Positions 14,275-51,644 of a stretch of DNA of 64,000 nt are shown in pieces. Made by a program: the position numbers and the translations under genes. The notes beneath the pieces are model-generated. The model saw only the letters and a list, made by a program, of their open reading frames with translations, made no database searches and had not been told where the DNA came from. Source of the stretch: Octopus bimaculoides (taxonomy: Eukaryota); NCBI RefSeq assembly GCF_001194135.2, contig NC_068984.1, positions 77,516,383 through 77,580,382 of the forward strand, in the 5' to 3' direction. The first letter of the stretch is position 1, and the number at the start of each line of letters is the position of its first letter.

Positions 14275-15345
14275 TGCAATTTAGAACATGTAAGCATCGG
14301 AGTTTGTCGATCGGGCAAAAAGATGTTGTCTGCAAACAAAACAGCAATTTGTTGTCCTTAACTGAGTCTAACAATCCAATTAAATAAGGTTTAGTCTTTT
14401 TCTGGAATGTCATTAACTTACAGCTCGGAAAATATGCATGTTTATACTCATTATAATACAAGAAAATCGAAATCGAGGCTGATCAGCCTCGTTTTGATTT
14501 TGCACATGCGCTTTAATTCTACTTCCGATTCGGTAGTTTTGCTCTCCATGATTTGCATATGTTGGCTTAATTTTAAGGAAAACAAATTATATAAACAAAC
14601 TGAATACATTAATTGATGAAGTTAAACTAGCAAAATCTTATCTATCGTCTGCTTAATTGTCAGCATCAACAACATTCTCATTGGTGATTCGTAAACGATT
14701 CATTCTAACAGGAAGTAAGTGACATCTTCAATGTATATTTCGCTCTCTCTTTCCTTTTTTTTTTCCTTTCTTATTTATCTCTCTCTGTTTCTCTCCCTGT
14801 ACTTCTCTTTCTCCTTTCTTTCTTATTTACGAACTCCAGTTCGTCTTTTTCTGAGATTTATTGCTTCTCTTTCATTCTCTGAATATGTCTACTTTTGTTT
14901 TTATGTTTATCACAAAAACAAATTGATAAACAGTTTCCAAATAAAGTAGACACTCGTTTGTAGGACCAGATAAGGAAACTAACATTATTAATTACCTTCG
15001 CTCTTTACGTACTGAAATAAGAAGGCACTCACTTCCTAATCATACGCCTTTTCACAGAAGACATAGTGCCTACGTTCACAAAACCGATCTTAACTGAGAG
15101 CAAAATCAAGAAGGAACTCTCTAAGTAGTCTTTCTCCATCCGTGATCCCTGGTAGAACTGTTTTTTTTTTTTATTTACGTTCCCTGGTTAGCATGAAGTT
15201 TACCGTGAGAATAAATTGTCCTTAAAATATATATATGTACAGTTTTCATGTTTTATGAAATAAATGTACGTTCTATACATTCTTTATGTCACATAGTGTT
15301 TACATGAAATTATGGGATGTCATTGTCGTCACTTCCGGATTTTAT
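14275..15345 (+). promoter_or_regulatory. Repeated promoter/first-exon module, copy A
   Basis: gcacatgcgc 14502-14511, cttccg 14522, uORF 14616-14630, donor GAA|GTAAGT at 14714/14715, cacttccggat about 15330. Homologous to copies B-D. Confidence 0.65.
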
Positions 15346-16490
15346 CGCAATTCACTTTCATTTTTTGGGGTAATTTACTTTCACTTTTTTTTATGACAGT
15401 AAACTGCATGTTAAACCCGTTCACTCAAGGTTTTGCGAGTACACCAATGATGCCACAGTCCAAAGCAGACATTTTAAAAAATATTAATTAACGCTCCGAC
15501 TTATTTTCGCATGCGCGCGCGTGTGCGGTCTCGCGCCATTTATTTTGAAATTACTCTACAGTTAGTCTTTATCCAGTTTTTGTGAGAAAATGTTTGATCA
15601 AAAGCATTCCAACCATGCCCATCTTGATTTATGGAGCAAAAGTTTTTCCTAGACAGCATTATCGTGTCTTTCTCATCATAATGGTCCAGATCAGAAAGTT
15701 CTTCAAAAATATTTAACAATCTGATTTAATTTTCTCTTTTTGCATATGCAGTTATATTTGAATTCAAATTGCAACTGAAGCAGTAAACAATATGAATCAA
15801 AATGAATACAGTTTAAATAGCCTTTAGTAATGCAATTCAGGATAATTAAGAATTGCAATTGATATTTGTTACCACACACAAGAATTCAATTGGAAAATTT
15901 TCATTACTTTTTCTTTACTGGGTTCAGAAGAAAAGGCAATGCCTATGGCCTTTGCAGACCCTCTGATGTCATAGAGATTGAATCTATTAATGTTTCCTTT
16001 GAATTATTGCAAGTCACCCTTGTGGGAAAGACATGAGTACAGAACAAATTCCAGAGGGCCATTATTCTGTAAAGGAAGGATTAGGTATTATGGCTGATGC
16101 AGGGCCTGGTGAACTGGGTTTGGTGCAAAAGGTGTGATAAGAGGAGAAGAAATGAGTAGAACAGGAATGCCTGAGTGTAGTTGGCATGGGTCCAGACAAC
16201 ACTGAAGAGTAGAGTCCATTATAGAGCAAGCAGAAAAGGCTGAGACAACAAAATGCCTATGGCCCAGAGGCTGGACAATGTCTTCAAATAATATATGCCA
16301 GACATTGAGGTGGCTCTTTTCCAAATGTTACGGTTTTAACATGTCTGTGTGAGAAGCAGTAGCACCATCCCTGAGGGGGAGCCATTCTTCATTGTGGTTT
16401 TCATGTGATTTTTGCAGAAATGTCAATATTGCTGGCAGATGAAGTATCTTGTAGACTTGGAGAGAAGGGTTAGTCATTGGGATGCAGTAC

Positions 16491-16872
16491 TGTTGGCACT
16501 CCGTCGCTTACGACATCGAGGGTTCCAGTTGATTTGATCAATGGAACAGCCTGCTCATGAAATTAACGTGCAAGTGGCTGAGCACTCCACAGACACGTGT
16601 ACCCTTAACGTAGTTCTCGGAGATATTCAGCGTGACACAGTGTGATAAGGCTGACCCTTTGAATTACAGAGACAACAGAAACAGGAAGTAAGAGTGAGAG
16701 AAAGTTGTGGTGAAAGAGTACAGCAGGCTTCGCTACCATCCCCTACTGGAGCCTCGTGGAGCTTTAGGTGTTTTCGCTCAATAAACACTCACAACGCCCA
16801 GTCTGGGAAACGAAACCGCGATCCTATGACCGCGAGTTCACTGCCCTAACCACTGGGCCATTGCGCCTCCAC
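16491..16872 (-). mobile_element. tRNA-derived SINE family Y, full length with TSD
   Basis: A/B-box head gtggaggcgcaatggcccagtggttagggc...ggtttcgtttccc. 9-bp TSD atgcagtac at 16482-16490 and 16874-16882. Second copy at 49247-49627. Confidence 0.9.
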
Positions 16873-16996
16873 AATGCAGTACTAGCTATGTGAAGAATGT
16901 TTTTTGCTAGGAGTAATCCTCATTGATATTGTGGTCCAATAATTTGTGTGATTGCGAAGGGTCTGGTTGTGTGTTGCTCATTTGCAAGAGAGGCGT

Positions 16997-17393
16997 AATA
17001 CTCTCTCTTTTACTTGTTTCAGTCATTTGACTGCGGCCATGCTGGAGCACCACCTTTAGTCAAGCAAATCGACCCCAGTACTTATTCTTTGTAAGTCTAG
17101 TACTTATTCTATCGGTCTCTTAGGCCGAACCTCTAAGTTACGGGGACGTAAACACACCAGCATTGGTTGTTAAGCGATGTTGGGGGACAAACACAGGCAC
17201 ACAAACTTATATATATATATATACATATATACGACAGGCTTCTTTCAGTTTCCGTCTACCAAATCCACTCACTAGGTTTTGATCGGCCTGAGGCTATAGT
17301 GGAAGACTCTTGCCCAAGGTATCACGCAGTGGGACTGAACCCAGAACCATGTGGTTGGTAAGCAAGCTACTTACCACACAGCCACTCCTGCGC
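16997..17393 (-). mobile_element. tRNA-derived SINE family Z (major octopus-type SINE)
   Basis: Head gcgcaggagtggctgtgtggtaag...gggttcagtccc with a central (TA/CA)n. Near-identical copies at 43311-43735 and 56321-56697. Confidence 0.9.
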
Positions 17394-17811
17394 ATGTGTA
17401 GCAATTCTGTTTTCTTACTGTTGAAAGAGAGAAGATTAGCATATCCCCATTGGGGAATGCTTTTGAATCCTATGTCCATGGAATCAGTGTGGTGTCTTCG
17501 TTGCAAGTAGATGATGCAGGGTTGGAGATGTATTAGGCTGAATGTAGTACCGTGGTTAAGAGTGTGCATTGTTAAACATGAAGGTAAGTAGGCTACTGAT
17601 GTATAGAAGAAAGAGAGAAGGGAACGAAACTGAACCATGAGGCACACCAGAGTTGATGGAGTGAGCAATAGAAAGAGTTCTATCACCATACAGTACAATT
17701 TGATAGAAAGCTACCAATCCAAGTGATGAGATATGGTTGGAACCTGTTGTTAAGCAGCTTCAATAAGAGAATCATGTACCAGGCATGGTCAAAAGCATTT
17801 CATATTCTCTA

Positions 17812-18205
17812 CATCATCATCGTCGTCATCGTTTAATGTCCGCTCTCCATGCTGGCATGGGTTGGACAGTTTGACTGACGGCTAGCAAGCCAGAAGGTTA
17901 CACCAGGCTCTAATCTGATCTGGCAAAGTTCCTACAGCATGATGCCCTTCCTAACGCCAACCACTCTGAGAGTGTAGTAGGTACTTTTTATGTGCCACCA
18001 GCACCACTGGCATCAACCACACTCAAATGGTGCTTTTTATGTGCCACCGGCACTGGCAACGACCATGCTTGAATGTTGTTTTTTACATATCACTGGCACA
18101 GGAGCCACAGTCAGGCGGCACTGGTGATGATCACGCTCAAATGGTGCTTTTAACGTGCCACTGGCATGGGTGCCAACTAGGTGATACTGTCATTGGCCAC
18201 GACAT
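17812..18205 (-). mobile_element. RTE-derived 3' UTR/tail element with (GAT)n end and internal minisatellite
   Basis: catcatcgtttaatgtccgctctccatgctggcatgggttggac... shared with 19090, 23366, 27392, 41283 and 46607. Confidence 0.8.
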
Positions 18206-18219
18206 ATATATATATCTAG

Positions 18220-18445
18220 GTGTGTGTGTCTTTGTGTCTCTGTTTGTCCCCCCATTACCACTTGACAACCAGTGTTGGTGTGTTTACATCCCTGTAACTT
18301 AGTGGTTCAGCAAAAGAGTCTGACAGAATAAGTACCAGACTCAAAAAATATGTATTGGGGTCAATTCATTTGACTAAAAATTCAAGGCAATGCCTCAGCA
18401 TGGCTGCAGTCAAAAGGGACTGAAACAAGTAAAAGATAAAAGACA
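18220..18445 (+). mobile_element. SINE family Z, 3' half
   Basis: Reverse complement of the 5' part of the 16997-17393 copy. Confidence 0.7.
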
Positions 18446-18659
18446 AACGTATGTCTTTTAATTCTGTCTTGTTTGACTTTGATTCCAATTGCTGTCAACT
18501 CCATGTTCATTCTTTACACACTATTAACTCTTTTATATCAATCCACTTGTCTGAGACTACGCTGGTCTCATTATACAAAAATTTATCATTTTAAAATGCA
18601 TGTATTTAAATTTAAACCTTGCATCATAATTTTATGCTCAGACGCTAACTTAATAATAA

Positions 18660-19465
18660 TATGAATTTCAACGTTTGGCACAAAGCTAACAAGTTCAAGG
18701 AAGTGGGATACTCAATTACCCCAGTGCTTCAGTGACACTTACTTTATTAATCCCAAAAGGAGAAAAGGCAAAGTTGACCTCAATGGAATCTGAACTCAGA
18801 ACATAATGCCACTAAGCATTTTGTCTAGCATGCTAACAATTATGCCAGTTCATTGTCTTAGCTTAATGATAATAATAATAATAATAATAGTTTCAAATTT
18901 TGCCACAAGGGCAACAATTTTGGGGGAGGGGATGAGTCGATTACATCAACTGGTACTTATTTTATCAACCCTGAAAGGATGAAAGGTAAAGTTGAACTCA
19001 GAAGATAGTGACAGGCAAAATACCACTAAACATTTCATCCGGCACGCTAACGGTTCTACCAGCTTACTACTTTCTTGATAATAATAATCATCACCGTTTA
19101 ACGTCCGTCTTCCATACTGGCATGGGTGGGATGGTTTGATAAGAACTGGCCAGGCAGAAGCCTGCACCAGACTTCTGTAACTGTTTTAGCAGGATTTTTA
19201 CAGCTGGATGCTCTTCCTAACACCAACCACTCAGCAGACCAATAATAATAATTATTTCAAATTTTTGCCATGGGCAGCTTGGGGGGAAGTGGGGATGAGT
19301 CGATTCTATCGCCCCCAGTGTCCAACTGGTACTTATTTTATCGACCCTGAAAGGATGAAAGGCAAAGTCGATCTTGGTGGAATTTGAACTCAGAACATAG
19401 CAACGGCTGAAATACCACTAAGCATTTCATCCAGTGTGCTAATGATTTTGCCAGCTTGCTACCAT
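18660..19465 (-). mobile_element. Cluster of three family X SINEs plus one RTE tail
   Basis: Three successive copies separated by (AAT)n or RTE-tail sequence. Confidence 0.8.
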
Positions 19466-19484
19466 CTTAACAACAACAACAAAA

Positions 19485-19830
19485 CAAGTGACAAAAAGAT
19501 AGATGCGAATAGGCTAGAAAGATTTCAGACAAAAATCATGCCCCCCTCATTGATATGACTCTCCCAATTGGCATAACTGTATCTGTCAAGACCTACTAAA
19601 AACTGAGCAAGAATAAAGATCTTAAAGTAGAAATTGGCAAAATGTGAAACCTCAAGACTAAAACAATACCTTTTGTCATAGGTGCCCTAGGAATGACAGA
19701 AAAAAGGGCTGATTCCTACCTAGCTCATCAGATATCAGGAAACCCTAAAATGGCAGAAATTCAAAAGATAATACTCATGGGAACTGCCCATATCTTACAT
19801 AAAATACTGTCTATATAATCTAAAATTTTA
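19485..19830 (+). mobile_element. R4/Dong-like non-LTR element, restriction-like endonuclease C-terminus
   Basis: Reads ANR....DFRQKSC.LIDMTLPI...KTY*KLSKNKDLKVEIGKM*NLKTKTIPFVIGALG...EIQKIILMGTAHIL, a PD..D..K RLE-type tail. Confidence 0.65.
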
Positions 19831-19889
19831 AAACAAACTTATAATTTTCTTATGTTTTCTTAAACATTCTCTAGAGCAATACTGTGTGC

Positions 19890-20535
19890 AAAACCAAATT
19901 GTATGATGCCAGTGTGTGAACAGTCATGCTACACAGCAGTGAAACATGGGCTGTGACCACAGAGGACATGCGAAGACTTGAAAGAAATGAAACTAGTATG
20001 CTTCACTGGATGTGCAATATCAGTGTGACAGTGTAAGTGTCTTAAAAGAAAAATTGGGCATAAGAGGCATCAGATGTGGTGTACAACAGAAGCAACTGTG
20101 CTGGTATGGTCATGTAATGCATATGAACGAGGATAGCTGTGTAAAGAAGTGCCAATCTCTAACTGTGGAAGGAACCTGTGGACGAGGTAGACCCAAGAAG
20201 ACATGAGACAAGGTGGTGAAGCATTATCTTCAAAAGCTGGGTTTCATGGAGGCAATGACAAGTGAGTGAAACCTTTGGTGATATGCTGTGCTTGAAAAGA
20301 CTCATCAAGTGAAATCCTAGTTGTGACCAGAGTCAGTGACTTGTAAAAGCACCCATGTTGGTGACATGTTAAAGGCATACACTACACTTTTGGAGTGGTT
20401 GGCATTAGAAAGTGCATCCAGCCATAGAAACCAAGCTAAAAATCAGATGGGAACTTGGTACAGTTCTCCAGCTTACCAGTTCCAGTCAAACTGTCTAACC
20501 CATGCCAGCAGGGAAAGCAGATGCTAAATGATGAT
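19890..20535 (+). mobile_element. RTE LINE 3' end
   Basis: LKEKLGIRGIRCGVQQKQLCWYGHVMHMNEDSCVKKC..GRGRPKKT, followed by the 3' UTR and (GAT)n. Confidence 0.85.
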
Positions 20536-21744
20536 GACAATCTTATTTGGATCATCAACTAATATTTTTGAAAAATGTCCGATTCTGGTTTTTCATTTTT
20601 GGAATACCAAAATAGCTTTTCCTTTTGGCAGAATCATTAGCACATTGGACTGGACTAAATACTTAGCAACATTTCATCTAGCTCTTTATGGTCTGAGTTC
20701 AAATGTTGCCACAGTCAACTTTGCCTTTCATCTTTATGTGTTCAATAAAATAAAGTACCAGTCAAGTTCTTGGGTTGATGTAATAGATCATTCCCCTCCC
20801 ACTGAATCTGCTGACCTTGTGCCAAAAATTTGAAATAGTCATTGGTGACATTTGATATACCATTTTAGTCAAAATTCTTTCACTTGCTTTATTAGTTGGC
20901 ATAAACTCATATGACTTTATTTTGGTATCTCCAGTAGCTTCATAAATCATAAATTAAGATGGTGGGATTTACAGCAACTTTCTATTCAGTGATGCTTAGG
21001 GAGTTATGCAAATACCCTTTCTTGACAATTAAGGTACTAGGAATGCACCTATTCTTGACAATGCATCTAGAGGGTTTTCCAAGCACATTCTACACAATGG
21101 TATTCAGGGAGTTAACCAAACTCCTGCTGGAGGAGTTTGGAAGCAAGCAGCTTTTCCCTTCCTTATAGGGTTGGTTGATTTAGGAGTTTGGGGCAGGAAG
21201 TATAATCACTCAAATTGTAATGTTTAAATCTTGTGAATTTAGGCAACAGAACTTGAATGTCTCTGGGTTGGGAGATAAGATAAGTATGTTTCTCAGACAT
21301 GTATGGTTTTAGGGCACTAAGTTGTTTAGAGCAAGTGTGCATGCTTTTTTTGTTCCAAAGGATAGTATAGTTGTCTGGATTGCAAGATATATGGTTTCCC
21401 TCCCATGGGCAGTTATATGCTTTTTTTTTCATCATGGATTTGTGTCTCTAAAGTGTCTAATTTAATTTAATTCAATGTTTATAATCAAAAACTTCAACCA
21501 TTTATCTTTATCAATTTCTACTAGTATTGGTTTCAAATTTTAGCACACGGTCATTTGTTTTTTGAGGAAGGAGTAAGTTAATTACATTGACCCCAGTGAA
21601 AAGATGAAAGGCAAAGTTAATCTCAGCAGAATTTGAACTTAGAATGTGAGGACTGATGAAATGCCACAAAGCAGTTTGCCCAGCATGCTAATGATTCTGC
21701 CAATTCATTGCCTTGTATTCTTCTAATATTTATATCCCATAGTA

Positions 21745-22618
21745 CAAGGTGGTATCAAAAAGTTCCCAAACTAATTCTGTAGCATGCCAACAGTTGGCAG
21801 CACATGGTTGTATGTGCAGTGACCTTCATGAGACAGTGTGCCAAGTGAAATTGCTGTTGACCTCACAAATTGTGAAATTTGTGTTTTTATGATCACATGT
21901 ACACTGTAATCTGTGATTTTTGTCATGGACAGGAAGTTTGAACAACTAGCTAACGTGAAATTTTGCACTAAACTTGGGAGGCTTGTTACAGAGGCATTGA
22001 GCATGCTTCAGTAAGCCTACGGTGATGAGGCAATATGTTGTAGACAATGTTTTGAGTGGCACGGACACTTCAAAAGCAGAAGAACCTCCCTGAAAGATGA
22101 TGAGCAATGTAGAAGACCTGCCACAAGTGTCAATCCCGGTAATATGAAGAAAATTCATCAGCTTGTGCATGAGGATCATCAGAGGACAATCAACAACATT
22201 GCTGATGTTATTGGTCTGTCATATACTCGCATGCAGGTAATCCTAGCATCCGAGAAGAATTGGATTTTTCACAAAGACAATGCATCCTGTTACTGAGCTC
22301 TCCTCACTCATGAGTTTCTTGCCAAAATCAACATGGTACCACTTCCGCACCCACACTGTTCACCAGATTTAAACACCATTGGATTTCCATCTTTTCCCCA
22401 TTTCAACATTGTTGTGGAGATCAAGTGTGAATTGCAGAAGGTCCTCAACTTGCTTATAGAAAACAACTTCCAGGCCAGATTCCAAAAATGGCAGGAATGC
22501 TAGCCTGTTGTATTGCTGCACAAAGTTACTATTTCAAAGGGGATAATGTTAGAACTTATAAAAATCAGTTATTTTTTATTAAACATAACGAGTCTGAGAA
22601 CTTTTTGATACTACCTTA
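21745..22618 (+). mobile_element. Internally deleted mariner with both TIRs
   Basis: TIRs caaggtggtatcaaaaagttcccaaact and the reverse complement of agtctgagaactttttgatactacctta, with TA on both sides. HTH region reads LQ*AYGDEA...CFEWHGHFKSRRTSLKDDEQCRRP. Confidence 0.85.
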
Positions 22619-22734
22619 TATCTTTCAAAATCATAATAACATTGAGAATTTCAGACAATGAAATTTTGTTATTAACAATGTAGCTGACATACTGATACTT
22701 TATGGATACTAACTTAGATGGAAAAATTATACCT

Positions 22735-22815
22735 GGTCACTTTGGTGTAATAGCAAGCATGGTTTCCTAGACCAGATTATGAGAGATAATTAGTTCGAGT
22801 CCTGTAGGTGGGCCT
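22735..22815 (+). pseudogene. Degenerate tRNA-like sequence (possible Arg-CCT pseudogene or lone SINE head)
   Basis: A-box tggtgtaatag, anticodon arm tggt-ttCCTag-acca, B-box gttcgagtcc, partial acceptor stem. T stem broken by extra sequence; no oligo(T) terminator. Confidence 0.35.
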
Positions 22816-23365
22816 GTGGACATTTGTTCTAACATGGATTGCTGTTCACAGAGTGCCTAATGTGCCTAAATGAATGTTTATAATAAAAAAAAGTTGTTAA
22901 CCATAGTACTTAATCAAATGAATATTAAATTTCTATTTAACCCAGTATAATGTATAATTTAACATTTTTCTCAGAGCATGGTGGTAGTGGTGGTGATAGT
23001 GAATTCCTGATGTCCACCATTCAGCATTTGTAGATAGTCAAATTATTCTATGGTTTGTTTTGCTTTTGCTTTTATAATTGTTTTCAGATTGTATTCCAGT
23101 GAAATAATCACAAAAAAATTAATAAAAAAGCTGGTTTGTTAGAGTCAGTTATTCTGCTGATGTTTAAATTGGTGGATCTTTTCATTTGTTCTCAGTTTCA
23201 GTCTTTCTGGTAGTGTATCCCACCTTTTCTGCCAAATCTTGTGAGCAAGGCATTTACCACGAAAAGGGCAACATAATAAATCCAATATTAAATTAGTTCT
23301 ACTTTTTACAATATCTCTGGGAAAAGTGGGATGGAATTTGAAGGGCCTTTATATAATGAAGATAT

Positions 23366-24170
23366 CATCATCATCTTTCCATGCTGGCATGGGTTGGACA
23401 GTTTGACTGAGGGTTTGCAAGCCAGAAGGCTGCACCAGGTTCTAATCTGATCTGCCAAAGTTTCTACAGCTGGATTCCCTTCCTAATGCCAACCACTCTG
23501 AGAGTGTAGTGGGTACTTTTTACATGCCACTGGCACGAGGGCCAGTCAGCCAGTACTGGCATTGACCACGCTTGAATGGTACTTTTTTACATGCCACCAG
23601 CACAGGCGCCACTGTCATTGACCATGACAATGACTTCACTTGGCTAAACAAGTCTTTGCAAGCGCAATTTATTGCCAAATGATTGAAGGGTACTCTTAAA
23701 TGGGTTGGTTATGCTGCACTGGCCTAGGCCATGGTTATGGTCTCACTTGGCTTGCCAGGTCTTCTCAAGCACAGCATGTCTCCAAAGGTCTCAGTCACTT
23801 GTCATCGCCTCCGTGAGGCCCAACTTTCAAACGTTGTGCTTCACCACTTCATCCCAGGTCTTCCTGGGTCTACTTCTTTCACAGGTTCCCTCTACTGCTA
23901 GAGTGTGACACTTTTTCACACAGCTGTTCTCATCCATACGCAACACATGACCATACCAGTGCAGTCGTCTCTCTTGCACACCACATCTGATGCTTCTTAT
24001 GTCCAACTTTTCTCTCAGGGCACTTGCACTCTGTCGGGTTTGCACACTGAGATTACACATCCAGCAGAGCATACTAGCTTCATTCCTTGCAAGCTAATGC
24101 ATGTCCTCAGCAGTCACGGCCCATGGCTGTTCACACACATGCGTCATATAGTCTACCTTTTACTCTGAGT
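23366..24170 (-). mobile_element. RTE LINE 3' end with UTR
   Basis: ORF 23827-24072 reads LREKLDIRSIRCGVQERRLHWYGHVLRMDE...RPRKTWDEVVK. Confidence 0.85.
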
Positions 24171-36265: not shown

Positions 36266-36269
36266 CCAC

Positions 36270-41090: not shown

Positions 41091-41247
41091 GAATAAAGTT
41101 AAAGAATGTGTTTATCCCAACCATCACCATTGCTTAGCAACTGCTGTTAGTTTATATCCACTTTGCTTTGCTGTTCAGCAAAGTAAAACAGCAGAAAATA
41201 AGTACCAGACTTAAATTAGTACTAGAGTCAATTTATTTGGCTGTACA

Positions 41248-41282
<35 letters not shown>

Positions 41283-41285
<3 letters not shown>

Positions 41286-41525
41286 GCCTGACTGGCCTTT
41301 GTAGGGTGTTTTCGTGGCCGTTTTCGTGCGGGTGACACGTAAAAGCACCCACTACACTCTCGGAGTGGTTGGCGTTAGGAAGGGCATCCAGCTGTAGAAA
41401 CTCTGCCAAATTAGATTGGAGCCTGGTGTTGCCATCCGGTTTCACCAGTCCTCAGTCAAATCGTCCAACCCATGCTAGCATGGAAGGCGGACGTTAAACG
41501 ATGATGATGATGATGATGATGATGA
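41283..41525 (+). mobile_element. Young RTE-tail element ending in (GAT)n
   Basis: Near-identical in reverse to 46607-46832. Confidence 0.85.
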
Positions 41526-43310
41526 AACTCTTCAAAGCAGTGCCCCAGCATGGCTGCAGCCTAATGACTGAAACAGGATTAAAGACAATCTTCTAAAAAG
41601 CAATAAATTTATGCTATCCATCATGAGGCTCTCTTTTGCCTTGAAAGGTCCAGTGCAAGTGCCATATTATCTGTGAGTAGTTAGTAAATCAAATGAAGCA
41701 GTGACAGTACAAAGCTTAAGAGAGTTCTGTAGTCTAACTGATGGTAAGGCAACTTGTATTGTGCTGGTGCTATAAAAGATTGCATCCAGTGCTATGTAAA
41801 GTGGTTAGCATTATTAGCAAAGGCATCCAGTCATAATAGCCATGCCAAAACTTATGTGGTCCTCTGACCTGTTGGATCCTGTCAAACTGTTCAATCCATG
41901 CCAATGTAGAAAGTGGCATGTAGAATGATGATGATGACCTGTAGACACTTACAATGGTTAACTCTAGTTTTTTTGTCTTTTCCAATGTTTCTAGCATTGT
42001 ACTCTGTCAATTGTATATGTTGCCTATGTATGTATGTATGTATGTGCTTACCTATGTATCTAAAAAAATCCAAGTGGAGTATAAAGCATCTCATGATTTT
42101 TCCAGCATATTTCTCTCCATAGAACTTAATAAAATCATTACATATTCAGAGAAGATATATCTACTAGAAAGATCTGATAAAATTAAAACACCTGAAAAAA
42201 TTCATGCAGTCTTAGATAAAATTTCTAGACACTGTTAAAAAAAATATCTGACTTCATGATTTTAGAAATCAGTGGCTGTAGCAAAACTATTATTATATAT
42301 TCAAACAATTTGGATTAAGCCAACAGTGATGAACAATGCATGGTATTAAACAAATTACACACCCTGAATGTGAATTTAGTTGGGGTATATAAAATCAGTT
42401 TCCTAAGCAACTCCCATTATAATTTTTTTTTTTTTTTCATTTCGGAGGGAAAAGAAAAAAATTTTGAAACTTTTTTCTTTTTGAATTCTAATATCCTATC
42501 TCACACCACCTTTTTATTTTAAAGTGCAAAAACCAGCTTTTTTTCTCTCCTAAATTATGTATTTTGAACATAGGATTTTATGATGCTGACAAAAATGTTT
42601 TGCAATTTCTTCTCATCTGTTTTGAAGTGTACAATCAACTGTAGAAGATCGGGCTCACTCCATCTCTGTATCTGTTTATTATACATTTTTTTTAGACAAG
42701 TCTGGATTTTTTTATTTCTCTTTATAAAAGATCTTTTTTTTTTTTAAATTTAAGAGCAAAATACCTGTACTAAATAACTGAAGTTGTATATATTCAATAA
42801 TTATAAAATTATTTTTTTGTAACCTTTTGACAAAAATCTTAGCAGAGAATTTTCCAAAAAAAGAATTTTTTTTTATTCAGATTTAGGTTTGATGTTCAAA
42901 GCAAATCCAAAAATTTTTCTATGAAAATATGCCATTAAAAGTTACAGTGTATACATCATACAACCATAATTACATATAGGAATATATATACATCACAAAT
43001 ATAGGTCTATGTTTGTGTATATGTATATATTATATGTATTTATGTACTCTCTTTTACTCTTTTGTTTCAGCGTGTTTGTGTATGTTCATATATACACATA
43101 TACCATAGTTTATAGATATACATGTGTGTCTATGTATTTTCATATGTCTACAAACAGTTAGTTACATACACAGTAATGGGGAGTCAAAAATAAAAGTCTG
43201 AAGAAATATTTTTTGTAATTGCTGAAAATTTCATAAAAATTCAAGGATGTTTATATGATAGAAACAAAGACCTGTGATTACAGTGGTTTTGAAACTATGA
43301 AATATATATA

Positions 43311-43533
43311 TTACTCTTTTACTTGTTTCAGTCATTTGACTGTGGCCATGCTGGAGCACCGCCTTTTTTAGTCAAGCAAATCGACCCCAGGATTTATTCT
43401 TTGGAAGCCTGGTACTTATTCTATCGGTCTCTTTTGCTGAACAGCATATATACGGGGACGTAAACACACCACCATCGGTTGTCAAGCGATGCTGGGGGGA
43501 CAAAGACAGACACACAAACATATAGACACACAT

Positions 43534-43580
<47 letters not shown>

Positions 43581-43733
43581 TACGATGGGCTTCTTTCTGT
43601 TTCTGTCTACCAAATCCACTCACAAGGCTTTGGTCGGCCCAAGGCTATAGTAGAAGACACTTGCCCAAGGTGCCACGCAGTGGGACTGAACCCGGAACCA
43701 TGTGGTTGGTAAGCAAGCTACTTACCACACAGC

Positions 43734-43735
<2 letters not shown>
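43311..43735 (-). mobile_element. Family Z SINE
   Basis: Near-identical to 16997-17393. Confidence 0.9.
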
Positions 43736-43775
<40 letters not shown>

Positions 43776-43829
43776 TAATATGATGTGTAAGTAGTAGGCA
43801 GGGTGTATGATGCCTGTGTGTGAACGGCC

Positions 43830-44283
43830 ATGCTATATGGCAGCAAAGCATGCATAAGAAGCAGATGTGTTGTGCAAAAGAGATAACCATGCTGGTATAG
43901 TCATGTGATGTGTATGAGCAAGGATGAGCACAGTTGTGTAAAGAAGTGCTGATCTCTAACTGTGGTCGGAACCTAGGAAGAATGGGATGAGGTGGTGAAG
44001 TATGATATTCAAATGTTAGGTCTCATGGAGGCAATGATAAGTGATCGAGATCTTTGGCAATTTGCTGAGCTTAAGAAGTGAAACCGTAGTTGTAGCTAGT
44101 GTTGATGACCTGTAAAAGGGACCCACTACATTCTTGGAGTGGCTGGCATTAGGAAGGGTGTCCAGTATAGAAACCAAGCCGAAATCAGACTGGAACCTGG
44201 TACAGCTCTCTGGCTTACCAGTTCCAGTCAAGCCTCTTAATCCATGCTTGCATGGAAAATTGACACTAAATGATGATGATGAT
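43830..44283 (+). mobile_element. RTE 3' end
   Basis: Same family as 19890-20535, with (GAT)n tail. Confidence 0.75.
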
Positions 44284-44479
44284 CTCATTGTCTTAAAGAT
44301 AACATTTTGGCAGAGATGCAGATGATGTATTTATGTTTACATGATTATGTGCTTGTATATGTACATAAATGCATGTATATAATTTCTGTATAATTATTAT
44401 AAATACACCTCCTCCCTCTACCTGCACCTACTCACTACATTCCCTCAAGATTTCTTCTGGAGTCATAATGGTGTTATCA

Positions 44480-45250
44480 GTGCAGCAGCGTTCATTTATT
44501 GTGGAATCTTATTTCAGATCAGGCCTTTTTATCAGTAGGTGATGGATTTACTCCTTTGACAATTTATCAGTTACTGATTTTAAGAGCGAATATCCAAATA
44601 TTCCTCCGCCAACAAAGCAGGCGATTAATGTTCTTATTAAAGAGTTTAGGAAGACGGGTTCAGTTGAAAACAAGAAACACGTTCATCTATGTACCCGCCT
44701 TTCTGATGATGTTGTGGAAGATATCCGTCAATGAATTCTTTGCACTCCCAGAAAATCTATGCAACGTTTGTCTCATGAAACTGGATTATCTGTTGGTAGC
44801 TGCCATATTGCTCTTTGCAAATTGCTGAAATTGTACCCATACCACGTGTCTTCTTTACATGAACTTGTTCTTGCTGATTTTACCAAAAGATTGGATTACT
44901 GCAAATGGTTTCAAGAAAACATGGATGACAACCTTCTTCAGTGACAAGGCTTGGATTCACCTATTGGTATACCTAAATTCGCAAAATACTCGCATCTGGA
45001 GTGCTCTCAATCCTCACGAATTTGTTGAATCACCCTTACATGCAGTGAAGATTGGTGTATGGATGGCTATCAGCAGGTGAAGAATAGGAGGACCAATTTT
45101 TTTCTCTTTTTTTTCCCAAGAAACCTTGAATTTGGAACATTATTGTGAGATAATTGATCAGTTTGTTGAGCAGCTAACTGAGAATGAAAGAAGTAATGTA
45201 TGGCTTCAACAGGGCTAGCAACCACACTTTGTGTCACTTATGACAAACTT
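44480..45250 (+). mobile_element. Tc1/mariner superfamily (DD37D/DD41D-type) transposase remnant
   Basis: FRKTGSV..., PRKSMQRLSHETGLS..LKLYPYHVSSLHEL..DFTKRLDYCKWF and FFSDKAWIHL..YLNSQNTRIWS..NPHEFVESPLHAVKIGVWMAIS. Confidence 0.85.
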
Positions 45251-45956
45251 TTGAACACAGGTTGATCATGAAAGATTCTGAACTCGCCCTCATTAAGCAC
45301 TCAAAAACATGCTCCAGTACGTTCGGGGCGACGGTGCCTCGTGTGCGTCTGCTTGAGTTGTCTGTTCGGCCCTATTTGCCAGTGCATGTGCGGTGGGGCC
45401 GCGAAGCTCTGCGTGCATTGCCGCCACATTGGCCACCCTGTGCTGTCTTTGCCTGTCTGGTTTCACGCCTGTGCGTCGTCAAACAGGTCAGTGCGGGAGC
45501 CATGAGGCAGGTGTCGGTGTTCATGTTGGGCTAGCACGTCCACCTCCCAGTCGTTTCGGCCTGCATGGTTCAGAGATGACAGATGACTGCAATTATTTGT
45601 AACATGAAGTGCAGTGCTGAAGATCTACTCACCTGTGCAAGTATAGTTAAACAATTGTTAATATGGTGGTAATGCTGTAGGTTGGCAATAGGATATATAG
45701 GTGTATTTGGTTCTCTTGCCCATTATATATCTTTTATGTTTTGGTGTGATGTACACTTCTTTTGATACCCTCTCATTTTTTTTCACTTGTATGCTTATCA
45801 TTTACCTCTTGTATTCAATGCACTATTTTGGCTAACTACCTAGTGATGGCAGTTGATTTCTCTTATACACTATACCACCACTTGTATAATATGGCATGGC
45901 AGTGGACCCAACCATATTCAATATTTCAGCTACCATTATCTCTCTCTCATCAAGAT

Positions 45957-45997
<41 letters not shown>

Positions 45998-46606
45998 TCA
46001 GAGATTGTGTCAGATCTATTTATATTCAATACAGTCTACTATCACCCTTTCTCTTCTGACAACCATGACTTCCTCTCTGCCAGGCCTCTCAATACTGACA
46101 TACATCACTCTCTTACTATTGCCCATCTTTATTACTATTCATCACTTGATCTCTCTCTCCAGTAAACATGTAAATGCTACTAGTTTCTCTACTATTGTTC
46201 CATATTTTTACTATCTTTCTCTATTTATTTCCTCATCCACCACTCTCCCTAATTGTTGTTTCTTCTGTTGTACTCTTGTTCCCTTCACTCACCCACTCTG
46301 ATTCTTCCGTCATTGGTTTCCTGTTCACTCCTTGTTTTTCTTACATTGAACAGTTAGTGACATTGTAGAGTAGCAAGAACCCTTTGGTCTTGTAGGGTAC
46401 TGGGCAGTCTAAGAGGTCTTATAAGTTTTCAAGTTTTAACATCTTTAAAAGGTGTTGCTGGAGTAATTGTACACTTTGCATGTAAGGCTTCTATCAGCTT
46501 TGATGTCCCTTTCCAAGCATACCATGAATGATCTGAGAAACTTGAAACTCATTTGAGTGTCTTCTTTGGTTCAACTTGGTTTCTTCTCTTAACAGAATGG
46601 TCTAAG

Positions 46607-46832
46607 TCGTCGTCGTTGTCGTTTAACGTCCGCTTTCCATGCTAGCATGGGTTGGACGATTTGACTGAGGACTGGTGAAACCAGATGGCTACACCAGGCT
46701 CCAATCTGATTTGGAAGAGTTTCTACAGCTGGATGCCCTTCCTAACGCCAACCACTCAGAGAGTGTAGTGGATGCTTCTACGTGTCACCCGCACAAAAAC
46801 GGCCACGCTCGAAATGGTGTCTTTTATGTGCC
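46607..46832 (-). mobile_element. Young RTE-tail element running into the assembly gap
   Basis: Family match. The sequence just after the gap continues with the same UTR minisatellite unit. Confidence 0.85.
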
Positions 46833-47793
46833 NNNNNNNNNNNNNNNNNNNNNNNNNNNNNNNNNNNNNNNNNNNNNNNNNNNNNNNNNNNNNNNNNNNN
46901 NNNNNNNNNNNNNNNNNNNNNNNNNNNNNNNNNNNNNNNNNNNNNNNNNNNNNNNNNNNNNNNNNNNNNNNNNNNNNNNNNNNNNNNNNNNNNNNNNNNN
47001 NNNNNNNNNNNNNNNNNNNNNNNNNNNNNNNNNNNNNNNNNNNNNNNNNNNNNNNNNNNNNNNNNNNNNNNNNNNNNNNNNNNNNNNNNNNNNNNNNNNN
47101 NNNNNNNNNNNNNNNNNNNNNNNNNNNNNNNNNNNNNNNNNNNNNNNNNNNNNNNNNNNNNNNNNNNNNNNNNNNNNNNNNNNNNNNNNNNNNNNNNNNN
47201 NNNNNNNNNNNNNNNNNNNNNNNNNNNNNNNNNNNNNNNNNNNNNNNNNNNNNNNNNNNNNNNNNNNNNNNNNNNNNNNNNNNNNNNNNNNNNNNNNNNN
47301 NNNNNNNNNNNNNNNNNNNNNNNNNNNNNNNNNNNNNNNNNNNNNNNNNNNNNNNNNNNNNNNNNNNNNNNNNNNNNNNNNNNNNNNNNNNNNNNNNNNN
47401 NNNNNNNNNNNNNNNNNNNNNNNNNNNNNNNNNNNNNNNNNNNNNNNNNNNNNNNNNNNNNNNNNNNNNNNNNNNNNNNNNNNNNNNNNNNNNNNNNNNN
47501 NNNNNNNNNNNNNNNNNNNNNNNNNNNNNNNNNNNNNNNNNNNNNNNNNNNNNNNNNNNNNNNNNNNNNNNNNNNNNNNNNNNNNNNNNNNNNNNNNNNN
47601 NNNNNNNNNNNNNNNNNNNNNNNNNNNNNNNNNNNNNNNNNNNNNNNNNNNNNNNNNNNNNNNNNNNNNNNNNNNNNNNNNNNNNNNNNNNNNNNNNNNN
47701 NNNNNNNNNNNNNNNNNNNNNNNNNNNNNNNNNNNNNNNNNNNNNNNNNNNNNNNNNNNNNNNNNNNNNNNNNNNNNNNNNNNNNNNNNNNNN
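46833..47793. other. Assembly gap (961 N)
   Basis: Run of N. Confidence 1.
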
Positions 47794-49246
47794 AGCACAA
47801 GAGCCAGTTCACGGGCACTGGCAACGATCTCGCTCGGTATCTGTGGTAATATTCAAGAGCAAAGTGGTGTTATCTGTAAGTCTAGATCAGTCAGTACTAC
47901 TGAACCTATTCTTCTGAACTTTCTTAAAATCCAGCTCCTCATAGTCACCAGCTGTTGCTGGAGAGTACAGTGCAGATCTCTGATGAAAACAATGAGTACC
48001 AATGTGTCACAGCTCAAACACCATGATTTCATAATGCACTGAGATCACTTGTGCTACGCTGTTGGTGCTCATGCCCTCACTGGTTCAATGAATGCTTGGC
48101 AGGATTCCATATGCTTTCAAGATCTTAATTGCTTCAGAGTTCGTAAACTTTATGACAGCATGTTGTCTGTTATTCTTTACTTCTTTTATTCTCTAAAGAG
48201 TCAAATCAACAGCAAAGCTTCTGAAGAACAGATATGGATGTTATTCTGCATTTGAAGAACATGCTGGGGTACCTTCTAGATGTGATTGATGAGGATGCAG
48301 ATATGCCACTTCATTACTGGCATTGACATTCATATGTTCATTGTGACTGAACTGAAGATGGTCAGGGCCTCAGCTGAAGCATTTGAAGAACTATCACTTG
48401 AACAGCATTCTGATAAACATCTGCAACGTATTGCTGATGAGTGTGACAAATAAAAATTGTTATCCCTTTCCAACATAATTTCTGATCCCAAATCCTAATC
48501 ATTTACCCTAACAAACACATTCAGTAACATCTATAGTCTGACCTGTATCACAGAAAAAATCTACAATCATATCATCTCAACTAAACAAGGGCAGCTATTG
48601 ATTTCAAGGTTAGATATTGCTAAAATGTTTTCATTAAACAGTGTGTGACTGTCATGCAAATCCTGGTACTTCAGAAGATAATACTTCCCCATTTAATTCC
48701 TACTTCTGTGCCACTATGAACACCTTACTTGACTTCCTAGTGACCTCCACACAATCTTAACAGAACTTTAATTGACATTCACCTATATATTAATGCAAAT
48801 ATGTTCTTTTGCTTAAGTCATCACTCTCTCCTGCACACAATGTGAACTTGTTGAACTTTGTCGCTTGTATTCTTTGGCCTATAGCTACATGTCCTTACCA
48901 GTGATTTACTACATTTAGGCACAGATATGCTGTGTGGTCAAGATGTTCACTTCAGAACCACATTAAGAGTTCAGCCCCACTGCATGGATATTGTCTACTG
49001 GTATCCTGTACTATAGACACAAGTTGAACAGTACTTTGTGAGTGAAACTGGTAGATGAAAACTGAAGCATATTGTGTGTATGTTAATTTTTTTGTGTTGC
49101 TGTGTTTGTTGGGACGAGTTTGTATTTTCCCAGGTCTTGTGCATTCACTAATTATAAACAAAAGTCTCGTTCAAGTAGTGTTGTTTGTTTCCATCTCTCT
49201 GGATAACCATATGTAGACTTTGTTGTTCAGTAAACTAAGGGATTAT

Positions 49247-49627
49247 TGTTGTTGGCACTCCGTCGCTTATGACGACGAGGGTTCCAGTTGATCCGATCAA
49301 CGGAACAGCCTGCTTGTGAAATTAATGTGCAAGTGGCTGAGCACTCCACAGACACGTGTACCCTTAACGTAGTTCTCGGGGATATTCAGCGTGACACAGA
49401 GTGTGACAAGGCTGGCCCTTCGAATTACAGGCACAACAGAAACAGGTAGTAAGAGAATGTTGTGGTGGAAGAGTGCAGCAAGGTTCGCCACCATCCCCTG
49501 CCAAAGCCTCGTGGAGCTTTAGGTGTTTTCGCTCAATAAACACTCACAACGCCCAGTCTGGGAATCGAAACCGCAATCCTATGACTGCGAGTCCGCTGCC
49601 CTAACCACTGGGCCATTGCGCCTCCAC
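49247..49627 (-). mobile_element. Family Y tRNA-derived SINE with TSD
   Basis: Near-identical to 16491-16872. TSD agggattat at 49238-49246 and 49629-49637. Confidence 0.9.
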
Positions 49628-50717
49628 TAGGGATTATCAATGTGCTTGGAAACTGGTGATGGTTAGTATCAGGAAGTGTATTCAGCTGTAGAAAACTCTG
49701 CCCCAGCATAGTTTCATCATGCATGGAAAAATAGACATTAATACAATGATAATGATGATATCAATATACTACATGCTCGTTGAAAAATGTTTCTCTCTCT
49801 CTCTCTCTGGTTGAGACCCAGTCTTGAAACATTGATTTTCTCTTCCCATCACTGATTACAAACCTCATAATTATAATTTAGGTTACCACTGATTTTGATG
49901 CAAAAGTTTGAAAGCCAACTATTGTCTTTCTGTTTATTTAGCACTAATTCCTCTGTGTAAGATTTCTAAAATAAGTTCCAGCTGTGTTGTTCTTTGGTTG
50001 ACAATCAATTGTTTTTGCCACACTGTTATCATGGCAGTTATCACCAGAGAATCATAAACCATATAGATATTAAGACCATATAGTTTTAAAGAACTACAAT
50101 ATAACCAACCCCAGTGACCCCAATGTCCTTGTCCCACATGAAGCAGAGTTTTGTCTTCATCAGCAGATCTATGAACAGAGGTTTCCCAGCCAGGACCATC
50201 TTGTATTATCCTTCATGATGGTATAGTGTATAAGTGACTGCATCCACTATGCCCAATTGTTTATTGTTCTTGTCTGTTTTTTTTTCTTTTTTTTTATGTG
50301 ATTTGAGATAAATTTGGTAGATGCATTTTAGCAAGCCAAACGATTTTGTTTGCTTATTTTGATTTTTGTCTCTTAAAGTGTAATACCCTCGAGAAACTGA
50401 ACATTGTAAGCAATGTGCGTGTATACATTTTGCAAACAGAGAAAAAAAGATTATGTACGAAAGTGTAGATGTCAAATAATGATGTAATGATTGATAATTA
50501 CACTTCTTATTCACTTAGGGAGCATAATCTTTTGTCACAGGAAGCATTTTGCCAAACATAAGAAAGATGCGTTTAATGACGTCAAAAATTTAGAACATTA
50601 ACAGCTCTTTCGAGTATAAGATTAGTCTATATTGAATTGCCAGTCAGATTTCGATGATCACGCTCTGGAATAAGATAGCATAAGATTTTGTTATTTCGTT
50701 ATTGTTGATCTTGTTTT

Positions 50718-51630
50718 CAAGAAATACATTGACATTTTGAGTGATGTCTCTTTACTATGGTCGTCATGGTGATTTATTCGTCGGTAGTCTGTTTGGTTAA
50801 GCGTTCAGAACCGTGGTGGCATGGTCTTCACGAATAAAATAGCGAAGAGCGTAAACATACGGTTGAACTTACGGAAAGTAGCGATTTCAACCGAACGCAA
50901 TTTAGAAACGAGGCAATGTGACATGTAAACTGGTCGATCAGGCAATAAACTGTTGGTTGAATGAAAATTAGGTCAGCATTTTCATTCGCTTCTTCCCTGT
51001 TGAGCCTCGCTCCGAAAACAACATTTATTCATTATAATATTCGTGTTATTCAACGAAATCGGGAAATAACCTCGTTTTGATATCGCACATGCGCCTTAAA
51101 TCTTCTTCCGGTCAGACATTTTTGCATTTATGATTTGCATACGATAACTTATTTTTCAAGAAAACAGATTGTAAAATCAAACTGAACAAATATATTTAGC
51201 GATGAAGTTAAAGTAACAAATTATTTGTCGTCCATTTAATCATCTGCATGGAGAACGTAATCATTAGCAATCCGTTCCAACAGGAAGTAAGTGACACATT
51301 CAGCGCCCTCTCACTCTCTCTTTCACCAATTGTGACCATTCTGTCGTACTTTTTCTTCGTTCTTTTCGCGTTCATATTTGTTATTCTTTTATATTCTCTG
51401 AACACGTGTGTGTACATATCGGTCTTTTATGTTTATTGCAAATTGTACATCAAAGGATTCAAATAAGACTCAAAACAAGGGGAAATTGTTCGTTAGTAAC
51501 GAATTGTTTTCGTAGTACCATTTAATACAAAATCGGCCTACTTTGCATCATTGGTAAACGTAAGTGGATACATATGACCTTGTTCTCGTATCTCCGGAAG
51601 CCCACGACTTCTGGATTGGAATTCACGATT
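50718..51630 (+). promoter_or_regulatory. Repeated promoter/first-exon module, copy D
   Basis: gcacatgcgc 51085-51094, cttccggtcagacatttt 51105, uORF 51202-51216, donor at 51286/51287, paired element 51576-51616. Confidence 0.7.
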
Positions 51631-51644
51631 ACCCTAATCGGGTA

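What the first reader, a model, noticed from the sequence alone, without database searches (positions are those of the whole stretch)
14275..51630. Four tandem, same-strand copies of a 1 kb promoter and non-coding first-exon module, spaced 10-15 kb apart
Seen: a block recurs at about 14.5, 29.1, 38.75 and 51.1 kb, with its ETS motif at 14522, 29101, 38755 and 51105. The copies have diverged, but the same motifs survive in the same order: acatgtaa..tcgatca/gggca..tgttg (decayed in C), ttataata, aacgaaatc-like, cctcgttt, (g/a)cacatgcgc, cttccgg(tcagacatttt), gatgaagttaaa, tgtcgtc, and an invariant AACAGGAA|GTAAGT about 180-205 nt after the ETS motif, followed by CT-rich sequence. I saw no TIR, TSD, tail or LTR signature. 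Established: GCGCATGCGC (NRF1), CCGGAAG (ETS/GABP) and GCCATTTT (YY1) are typical TSS-proximal motifs, and GTAAGT is the consensus 5' splice site. Inference: these are duplicated promoters with 5' UTR exons under motif-level constraint, while the sequence between them was replaced by transposons.
Basis: partly seen in the sequence, partly recalled or inferred. Interest (0 to 1): 0.8.

Follow-up and report, generated by a model that had tools for sequence, protein, structure and literature searches.

The report
Four duplicated promoter/first-exon islands in octopus
Four old tandem copies of a roughly 1 kb promoter-like block ending in a perfect splice donor sit at the start of, and inside, a long stretch of octopus DNA whose CpG loss suggests germline methylation, so they are most likely alternative promoters with non-coding first exons of one gene, an ordinary kind of gene architecture.

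Summary
Exactly four same-strand copies of a 0.9-1.0 kb module lie at 14.1-15.7, 28.8-30.2, 38.3-39.3 and 50.7-51.6 kb. They are 64-75% identical. The motifs keep the same order, and an invariant AACAGGAA|GTAAGT follows 181-206 nt after the ETS-like site. No fifth copy turned up in the rest of the window or in 49.5 kb of unlinked octopus DNA.

The new evidence is a CpG footprint. CpG observed/expected is 0.82 from 1 to 14.1 kb and 0.27 from about 15.75 kb to the window end, with a matching TpG/CpA excess. The modules score 1.03-1.46, while no other 1-kb window in the depleted domain exceeds 0.64. A repeat family with copies in both regions shows the same contrast, and an annotated Octopus vulgaris gene start shows the same step. 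In octopus, methylation marks gene bodies and spares promoters (PMC9476566).

The modules therefore look like unmethylated promoter islands. The first one sits at the 5' edge of a methylated transcription unit of at least 48 kb. No paralogous coding exons lie between the copies.

Best reading (about 0.5): tandemly duplicated alternative promoters with non-coding first exons of one unidentified gene. Transcription, splicing and gene identity are untested. This is a new member of a known kind and of modest interest.

The parts
14130..15750 (+). Module A, the 5'-most copy, with its CpG-rich 3' extension. Core homology is 14282-14757. The CpG-undepleted state runs in from upstream and stops abruptly at about 15750.
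28770..30160 (+). Module B. Core homology is 28861-29349. The CpG island spans 28750-30250. It contains a local tandem duplication of about 300 nt (29535-29817 / 29829-30157).
38310..39340 (+). Module C. Core homology is 38482-38979. The CpG island spans 38250-39500.
50700..51640 (+). Module D. Core homology is 50917-51330. The CpG island spans 50250-52250 and includes the adjacent hairpin element at 51701-52197.
14502..14529 (+). Promoter-like core of A: NRF1-like GCACATGCGC (14502-14511) followed by the ETS-like CTTCCGAT (14522-14529). The same core is at 29081-29118, 38735-38772 and 51085-51122, where it continues into AGACATTTT.
14448..14458 (+). TATA-like TCATTATAATA, invariant in all copies. 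Also at 29023-29033, 38673-38686 (with a TAT insertion) and 51029-51039.
14616..14630 (+). Four-codon upstream ORF, ATG-AAG-TTA-AAC-TAG. The start and stop are kept at the same position in all copies. Also at 29208-29222, 38838-38852 and 51202-51216.
14707..14720 (+). Invariant AACAGGAA|GTAAGT, a consensus 5' splice site overlapping an ETS consensus (ACAGGAAGT). The last exon base is 14714.
29300..29313 (+). The same invariant donor block in B. The last exon base is 29307.
38929..38942 (+). The same invariant donor block in C. The last exon base is 38936.
51279..51292 (+). The same invariant donor block in D. The last exon base is 51286.
29657..29680 (+). Second conserved block, TCCGGAAG-N6-ACTTCTGGAT, 307-350 nt after the donor. 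Also at 29956-29979 (duplicate), 39303-39326 and 51593-51616. In A there is only a weak counterpart near 15325-15350.
15332..15541 (+). Extra promoter-like cluster found only in A: CTTCCGGA (15332), AGACATTTT (15467), CGCATGCGCG (15508) and GCGCCATTT (15533). It ends about 200 nt before the CpG-depletion step.
15751..64000 (.). CpG-depleted domain: o/e 0.27, TpG/CpA o/e 1.35-1.37, GpC control 1.06. It is read as a germline-methylated transcribed region and is interrupted only by modules B, C and D.

Best explanation
An ancestral segment of about 1 kb was duplicated in tandem three times, long ago. It carried a promoter core (TATA-like box, NRF1-like site, ETS site, YY1-like AGACATTTT), a non-coding first exon with a tiny upstream ORF, a consensus splice donor and a proximal intronic block. 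The four copies are now 64-75% identical.

All four copies have stayed free of germline DNA methylation and under motif-level constraint. Everything between them decayed and filled with transposons.

Copy A sits at the 5' boundary of a transcription unit that is methylated in the germline and runs rightwards for at least 48 kb, past the end of the window. Copies B, C and D are internal unmethylated islands in that unit.

The most likely working is that each island initiates transcription, and each non-coding exon 1 splices from its GTAAGT donor to shared downstream exons that lie beyond the window or were not recognised in it. Promoter choice would then change regulation and the 5' leader, but not the protein.

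Shown here: the duplication, the constraint, the non-coding nature and the CpG footprint. Inferred: methylation state, initiation, splicing, a single host gene and the + strand of that gene.
For: Four same-strand copies:
- Exactly four copies, all on the + strand, with the same motif order.
- Invariant columns are clustered.

The modules are the only CpG islands in the depleted domain:
- The modules have CpG o/e 1.03-1.46. None of the 390 other 1-kb windows in 15.75-64 kb exceeds 0.64.
- The island limits coincide with the limits of homology.
- 51 of 68 CpG sites in the modules are copy-specific, so the signal is regional and not motif conservation.

The CpG step sits next to copy A:
- CpG o/e is 0.82 before module A and 0.27 after about 15.75 kb. 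TpG/CpA rises to 1.35-1.37 while GpC stays near 1. Poisson P = 4e-168.

The depletion is regional, not an age effect:
- One SINE-like family keeps 9 of 12 ancestral CpGs in the copy at 10.0 kb. Six copies inside the domain keep 0-4, at similar non-CpG divergence.

Control and literature:
- At an unlinked O. vulgaris locus, CpG o/e falls from 0.4-1.0 to 0.1-0.3 at the start of an annotated gene.
- In octopus, 5mC lies on the gene bodies of broadly expressed genes and is absent from promoters, intergenic DNA and transposons (PMC9476566).
- ETS, NRF1 and YY1 motifs are promoter-enriched and can act as initiators in human (PMC11160661).

No coding alternative:
- No paralogous exon-like segments lie between the units at the DNA or ORF level.
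- No shared ORF exists in the modules.

Organism:
- The window is octopus-like. Its mariner fossil is 81% identical in protein and 90% in DNA to O. vulgaris copies, and the repeat families are shared.
Against: - No RNA, CAGE, chromatin or bisulfite data were available, so initiation, splicing and methylation are all inferred from sequence.
- No downstream shared exon was found. The two searches with concatenated ORFs returned nothing. They are weak negatives, because the second search also failed to report a mariner-like ORF included in its query, although no mariner ORF other than 30970-31410 was ever confirmed by a separate search.
- The strand of the methylated unit is not independently established, because TA skew proved unreliable in the control locus.
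- In the control locus, CpG depletion continues across a 4.8 kb spacer between two annotated genes. Continuous depletion therefore does not exclude four adjacent genes.
- The invariant 14-mer contains an ETS consensus, so it may be conserved as a binding site rather than as a donor.
- Copy A has a degraded ETS core and a separate, stronger promoter-like cluster about 600-830 nt downstream. The true first start site may not be in the module core.
Confidence: 0.5

Rival explanations
1. Four separate tandem genes, protein-coding with very short or fast-evolving exons or long non-coding. Each has its own promoter and first exon and ends before the next module.
For: - The regular 9.7-14.6 kb head-to-tail spacing is typical of tandem gene arrays.
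- Promoters and first exons of non-coding genes are often the only conserved parts.
- CpG depletion can continue across a spacer between genes in the control locus.
- The searches for exons here were insensitive.
Against: - Apart from the modules, no collinear similarity survives between units at the DNA level (word 7) or in ORFs of 22 aa or more.
- Coding exons would be expected to be at least as conserved as a 5' leader that is 64-75% identical.
- The CpG step occurs only at module A, with no recovery before B, C or D.
Confidence: 0.2
2. Duplicated intragenic regulatory islands (enhancers, boundary or factor-landing sites) that do not start stable transcripts. AACAGGAAGTAAGT would be conserved as an ETS site, paired with the inverted ETS site about 190 nt upstream, and not as a splice donor.
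For: - ACAGGAAGT is a canonical ETS consensus (own knowledge).
- The upstream CTTCCGG is its inverted partner.
- Unmethylated islands also mark enhancers.
- A second ETS-containing conserved block lies about 300-350 nt downstream.
Against: - The full GTAAGT, beyond the ETS core, is invariant in all four copies.
- A TATA-like box, an NRF1-like/ETS/YY1-like core and a conserved 4-codon upstream ORF with a preserved stop fit a promoter with a leader.
- High-affinity NRF1, ETS and YY1 sites are depleted in enhancers relative to promoters in human (PMC11160661).
- Module A lies at the edge of the methylated domain, where a start site is expected.
Confidence: 0.13
3. An old interspersed repeat (a non-autonomous transposon) that happens to have four copies here.
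For: - The homology has roughly common left and right limits.
- The window is repeat-rich.
- The genome itself could not be searched.
Against: - All four copies have the same orientation and even spacing.
- There is no copy in the other 27 kb of the window or in 49.5 kb of unlinked octopus DNA.
- No terminal inverted repeats, target-site duplications, tails or transposon ORFs were found.
- Unlike the old repeats around them, which lost their CpGs, these old copies keep full CpG content.
- A metagenome scan gave only a chance match in a bacterial coding sequence.
Confidence: 0.07
4. The modules lie antisense inside, or just beyond the 3' end of, a methylated host gene on the - strand whose promoter is to the right of the window. 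They would drive antisense or nested transcripts.
For: - CpG depletion is strand-blind.
- The strand could not be confirmed.
Against: - The depletion boundary would then fall within about 1 kb of module A by coincidence, roughly a 1 in 12 chance given the spacing (inference).
- No - strand exons or ORFs were recognised.
Confidence: 0.1

Closest known systems
[quoted passage not shown] Chelicerate sDscam 5' cassettes with alternative promoters (PMC4835542).
   Same: A head-to-tail array of paralogous first exons made by tandem duplication. Each has its own promoter-like region and its own splice donor, with spacing of several kb.
   Different: The exons here are non-coding, so promoter choice would not diversify the protein. 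There are only four copies. The shared constant exons were not found. Splicing and promoter choice were not demonstrated.
Genes with several alternative untranslated first exons, for example the glucocorticoid receptor NR3C1, NOS1 and CYP19 (own knowledge).
   Same: Non-coding leaders chosen by alternative promoters. The function is regulatory only.
   Different: To my knowledge those first exons are not recognisable paralogues of one another. Here the four are clear duplicates with conserved motif order.
Unmethylated CpG-island promoters inside methylated domains. In octopus, gene-body methylation spares promoters (PMC9476566).
   Same: Islands of 1.25-2 kb with CpG o/e of 1 or more inside a strongly CpG-depleted, presumably methylated, transcribed region.
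   Different: G+C is only 32-37%, far below vertebrate island criteria. The methylation state is inferred from mutational footprint only.

Membership tests
Multiple-variable-first-exon cluster (Pcdh/UGT1 type) | Tandem, same-orientation array of paralogous first exons | tested here: met
   Four + strand copies, E 1e-110 to 1e-131, 64-75% identical.
Multiple-variable-first-exon cluster (Pcdh/UGT1 type) | Each variable exon has its own promoter | tested here: inconclusive
   A conserved TATA-like/NRF1-like/ETS core and an undepleted CpG island are present at each copy. There are no initiation data.
Multiple-variable-first-exon cluster (Pcdh/UGT1 type) | Each variable exon ends in a 5' splice site | tested here: met
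   GTAAGT is invariant in all four copies. Its use in vivo is not tested.
Multiple-variable-first-exon cluster (Pcdh/UGT1 type) | All variable exons splice to common constant exons | not testable with these tools
   No RNA data were available. No downstream exon was recognised in 51.6-64 kb (a weak negative).
Multiple-variable-first-exon cluster (Pcdh/UGT1 type) | Variable exons encode a variable part of the protein | tested here: not met
   No ORF is shared by the four copies. No ATG-initiated frame reaches the donor in all copies.
Tandem array of complete paralogous genes | Paralogous downstream (coding) exons in every unit | tested here: not met
   Between units, only the modules and transposon fragments are shared.
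Interspersed repeat / transposable element family | Dispersed copies in both orientations | tested here: not met
   No copy was found elsewhere in the window or in L001 plus L005, 49.5 kb of octopus DNA. The whole genome was not searchable.
Interspersed repeat / transposable element family | Terminal inverted repeats, LTRs, a tail or target-site duplications; transposon ORFs | tested here: not met
   None is shared by the copies. There are no transposon-like ORFs in the modules.
Unmethylated promoter island in a gene-body-methylated gene | CpG undepleted over 500 nt or more within a depleted domain | tested here: met
   o/e is 1.03-1.46 over 0.9-1.4 kb, against a maximum of 0.64 elsewhere in the domain.
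Unmethylated promoter island in a gene-body-methylated gene | Measured absence of 5mC at the island and presence of 5mC in the flanks | not testable with these tools
   This needs bisulfite or nanopore methylation data from the species.
Known structured RNA genes (snRNA, spliced-leader RNA, tRNA-derived elements) | Match to a curated RNA family, a conserved structure or an Sm site | tested here: not met
   No Rfam match at gathering score and no tRNA. The consensus fold is -7 kcal/mol with no covariation. No Sm-like site follows the donor (read).
Mutually exclusive internal exon array (Dscam type) | Conserved acceptor and donor flanking a coding exon | tested here: not met
   The exon is non-coding. 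An AAG about 120-145 nt before the donor is present in all copies, but it shifts by one base and is weak evidence for an acceptor.

The most novel reading that the evidence does not exclude
An octopus gene would carry a protocadherin-like array of paralogous promoters whose variable exons are entirely non-coding. Tandem duplication would then have been kept purely to multiply regulatory inputs, through stochastic or cell-type-specific promoter choice, or through leader and upstream-ORF variants, with each copy protected from the gene-body methylation around it.
Probability: 0.2. Interest if true: 0.5.

Novelty: new member of a known kind. Interest (0 to 1): 0.35.

Why it matters
If confirmed, this would be a clear invertebrate example of alternative promoters multiplied by tandem duplication and kept for regulation alone. 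It would also give four natural variants of one octopus promoter for studying which motifs matter.

The analysis also has a practical use. In octopus sequence, the CpG-decay footprint by itself locates the 5' edge of a methylated transcription unit and its internal promoters. That could help annotation where RNA evidence is thin.

It does not overturn anything known.

Tried and rejected
- Coding on the minus strand. A frame of about 20 codons with a conserved stop and a 3-nt indel looked suggestive. Other frames look equally 'conserved', copy A has an in-frame stop just upstream, and there is no conserved acceptor. Rejected.
- Structured RNA or spliced-leader gene. No Rfam match, no tRNA, no conserved fold and no Sm site. 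Rejected.
- Pfam scan of ORFs of 60 aa or more from the first ~27 kb of the window gave nothing. Targeted ORFs confirmed only mariner and DDE fragments.
- Two protein searches with concatenated + strand ORFs, from 51.6-64 kb and 14.7-51 kb, gave no hits. I treat these as weak negatives, because a mariner-like ORF in the second query also produced no hit.
- Exact look-up of a window ORF to find the source contig returned nothing on record.
- The O. vulgaris locus of the best mariner hit was hoped to be orthologous. It is only a paralogous transposon copy, and was used instead as background and as a methylation-footprint control.
- A metagenome scan with the 21-specified-base NRF1..ETS pattern gave three hits. 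All are one bacterial coding sequence that looks Rho-like by eye (no family search was run) at 48% G+C, so this is a chance match.
- TA and GC skew as a strand indicator looked consistent in the window but failed in the control locus. Dropped.
- A search for cephalopod literature on promoter motifs found nothing specific.


Full report
**1. The observation**

Reading the four places and aligning them shows a real four-fold repeat on the + strand. A profile built from the copies finds exactly four matches in the 64 kb window, at 14282-14757, 28861-29349, 38482-38979 and 50917-51330, with E 1e-110 to 1e-131. Nothing else matches on either strand.

Pairwise blastn identities are 68-75% over 250-320 nt. 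Over 421 ungapped columns the identities are 64-73%.

- CTTCCG starts at 14522, 29101, 38755 and 51105.
- The 14-mer AACAGGAAGTAAGT is exact at 14707, 29300, 38929 and 51279, against 0.07 expected.
- The last exon bases would therefore be 14714, 29307, 38936 and 51286.

Invariant columns are clustered, in runs of 14, 14, 9, 8 and 6. Shuffling gives P = 0.004 for the longest run and P = 0.0007 for four runs of 8 or more.

- Copy A reads CTTCCGATTCGG, not CTTCCGGTCAGACATTTT.
- The literal YY1 string GCCATTTT is not in any core. Copies B-D have AGACATTTT.
- Homology is wider than described. It starts about 380 nt before the ETS site. It includes a second conserved block, TCCGGWAG-N6-ACTTCTGGAT, 307-350 nt after the donor in B (twice), C and D.

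**2. The assembly gap**

The gap at 46833-47793 lies in the C-D interval, far from both modules. Its left flank is a repeat copy cut off by the gap. No reading frame is at stake. Only the C-D spacing is uncertain.

**3. What the modules are not**

- Not a known RNA. There is no Rfam match at gathering score, no tRNA and no conserved fold.
- Not coding. No ORF of 35 aa or more is shared in position by all four copies, and no ATG-initiated frame reaches the donor in all copies. A short minus-strand frame that looked conserved is no better than other frames.
- Not a recognisable transposon. The copies share no terminal inverted repeats, flanking direct repeats or tails.
- Not dispersed, as far as could be checked. 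There are no copies in the rest of the window or in 49.5 kb of unlinked octopus DNA.
- Not found in metagenomes. A scan with the 25-nt pattern (21 specified bases) hit only one bacterial coding sequence, by chance.

**4. The surroundings**

The organism is octopus-like. A fossil mariner at 30.7-31.65 kb is 81% identical in protein to an Octopus vulgaris entry and 90% in DNA to an unlinked O. vulgaris copy. Many short repeat families are also shared.

Between the modules, 13-38% of each interval is recognisably repetitive. This is a lower bound, because the reference was tiny.

Apart from the modules themselves, sensitive DNA comparison and ORF-level comparison find no collinear similarity between the four units. 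In particular, there are no paralogous exon-like segments.

**5. The CpG footprint, the main new evidence**

CpG observed/expected by region:

| Region | CpG o/e | Source |
|---|---|---|
| 1-14.1 kb | 0.82 | |
| Four modules | 1.03-1.46 | |
| Inter-module sequence, about 15.75 kb to the window end | 0.27 | |

In the depleted sequence, TpG and CpA rise to 1.35-1.37 while the GpC control stays near 1. The step after module A is abrupt at about 15,750.

The islands span 28,750-30,250, 38,250-39,500 and 50,250-52,250. These limits coincide with the limits of homology. None of the 390 other 1-kb windows in the depleted domain exceeds 0.64.

Most CpG sites in the modules (51 of 68) are present in only one copy. 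The islands therefore reflect a regional lack of CpG decay and not conserved CpG-containing motifs.

A same-family control excludes an age artefact. A SINE-like copy at 10.0 kb keeps 9 of 12 inferred ancestral CpGs. Six copies inside the domain keep 0-4, at comparable non-CpG divergence.

A positive control comes from an unlinked O. vulgaris locus. There, CpG o/e falls from 0.4-1.0 to 0.1-0.3 at the start of an annotated gene.

Published octopus methylomes place 5mC on the bodies of about 14,000 broadly expressed genes. They find it scant or absent in promoters, intergenic DNA and transposons (PMC9476566).

The simplest reading has three parts:
- Module A stands at the 5' edge of a germline-methylated transcription unit.
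- That unit extends for at least 48 kb.
- Modules B-D are unmethylated islands inside it.

**6. Mechanism**

Each island carries, in conserved order:
- a TATA-like box;
- an NRF1-like GCACATGCGC;
- an ETS site;
- AGACATTTT in B-D, which is compatible with the degenerate YY1 consensus as I recall it;
- a four-codon upstream ORF whose start and stop are preserved in all copies;
- a consensus donor.

ETS, NRF1 and YY1 motifs are promoter-enriched and can position initiation in human (PMC11160661).

I therefore favour tandemly duplicated alternative promoters with non-coding first exons that splice to shared downstream exons. My confidence is about 0.5.

The caveats are substantial:
- There are no expression or methylation data.
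- No downstream exon was identified (both weak negatives).
- The strand of the host unit is not confirmed, because skew analysis failed its control.
- CpG depletion can bridge a gap between genes in the control locus, so four adjacent genes are not excluded.
- The invariant 14-mer contains an ETS consensus and might be conserved for that reason.
- Copy A has an additional, stronger promoter-like cluster at 15,332-15,541, just before the methylation step. That cluster may be the true first start site.

**7. Comparison with known systems**

The architecture works like the multiple-variable-first-exon clusters (protocadherins, UGT1, GCNT2: PMC1885805; chelicerate sDscam: PMC4835542). It fails one of their features, because the variable exons here are non-coding. 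The shared constant exons also could not be tested.

It also resembles genes with several untranslated alternative first exons, except that here the exons are clear paralogues of one another.

**8. Verdict**

It is now backed by an independent mutational footprint. The kind of architecture is known, the gene is unnamed and function is untested. Interest is modest, at about 0.35.

Noticed in passing
window 15332-15541: A CpG-dense promoter-like cluster found only in unit A: CTTCCGGA, AGACATTTT, CGCATGCGCG (near-perfect NRF1 palindrome) and GCGCCATTT (YY1 core). It ends about 200 nt before the abrupt CpG-depletion step at about 15750. It may be the real first start site of the transcription unit.
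   Followed up: partly
window 29535-30157: A local tandem duplication of about 300 nt inside module B (29535-29817 vs 29829-30157, blocks 88-94% identical). It doubles the second conserved block.
   Followed up: partly
window 51701-52197: A hairpin, MITE-like element with 111-nt arms that are 94% complementary. It lies directly 3' of module D, is still CpG-rich, and extends island D.
   Followed up: no
window 30663-31650 (-): A fossil mariner transposon with Transposase_1 and Mos1 HTH domains and frameshifts. It is 90% identical in DNA to an unlinked Octopus vulgaris copy, which places the window in or near the genus Octopus.
   Followed up: yes
window 16491-16872 and 49250-49627: A pair of repeat copies, 90% identical, that still have CpG o/e of about 0.7 inside the depleted domain. 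This fits recent insertion. One copy carries a one-mismatch copy of the donor 14-mer (16680-16693), which is probably chance.
   Followed up: partly
window 10015-10226, 18651-19457, 20626-20843, 21581-21734, 56008-56201: A SINE-like family of about 210 nt with a (TAA)n tail. CpG retention depends on location: 9 of 12 ancestral CpGs are kept outside the depleted domain and 0-4 inside it. This serves as an internal control for regional methylation.
   Followed up: yes
window 12405-13073 and 3920-4800: Two more foldback or TIR-like elements in the CpG-normal upstream region. One is an inverted repeat with 273-nt arms (85%). The other has ends rich in caatcaatta and internal tandem repeats of about 94 nt at 4324-4624.
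   Followed up: no
window 59885-60229 (-): A Tc1-like DDE_3 transposase C-terminal fragment in an ATG-initiated 115-aa ORF that runs into a (GT)n microsatellite.
   Followed up: partly
L001 (O. vulgaris OX597816.1:129951676-129980816): CpG depletion (o/e 0.17-0.30) continues through the 4.8 kb between two convergent annotated genes. In octopus, continuous depletion therefore does not by itself prove a single transcription unit.
   Followed up: partly
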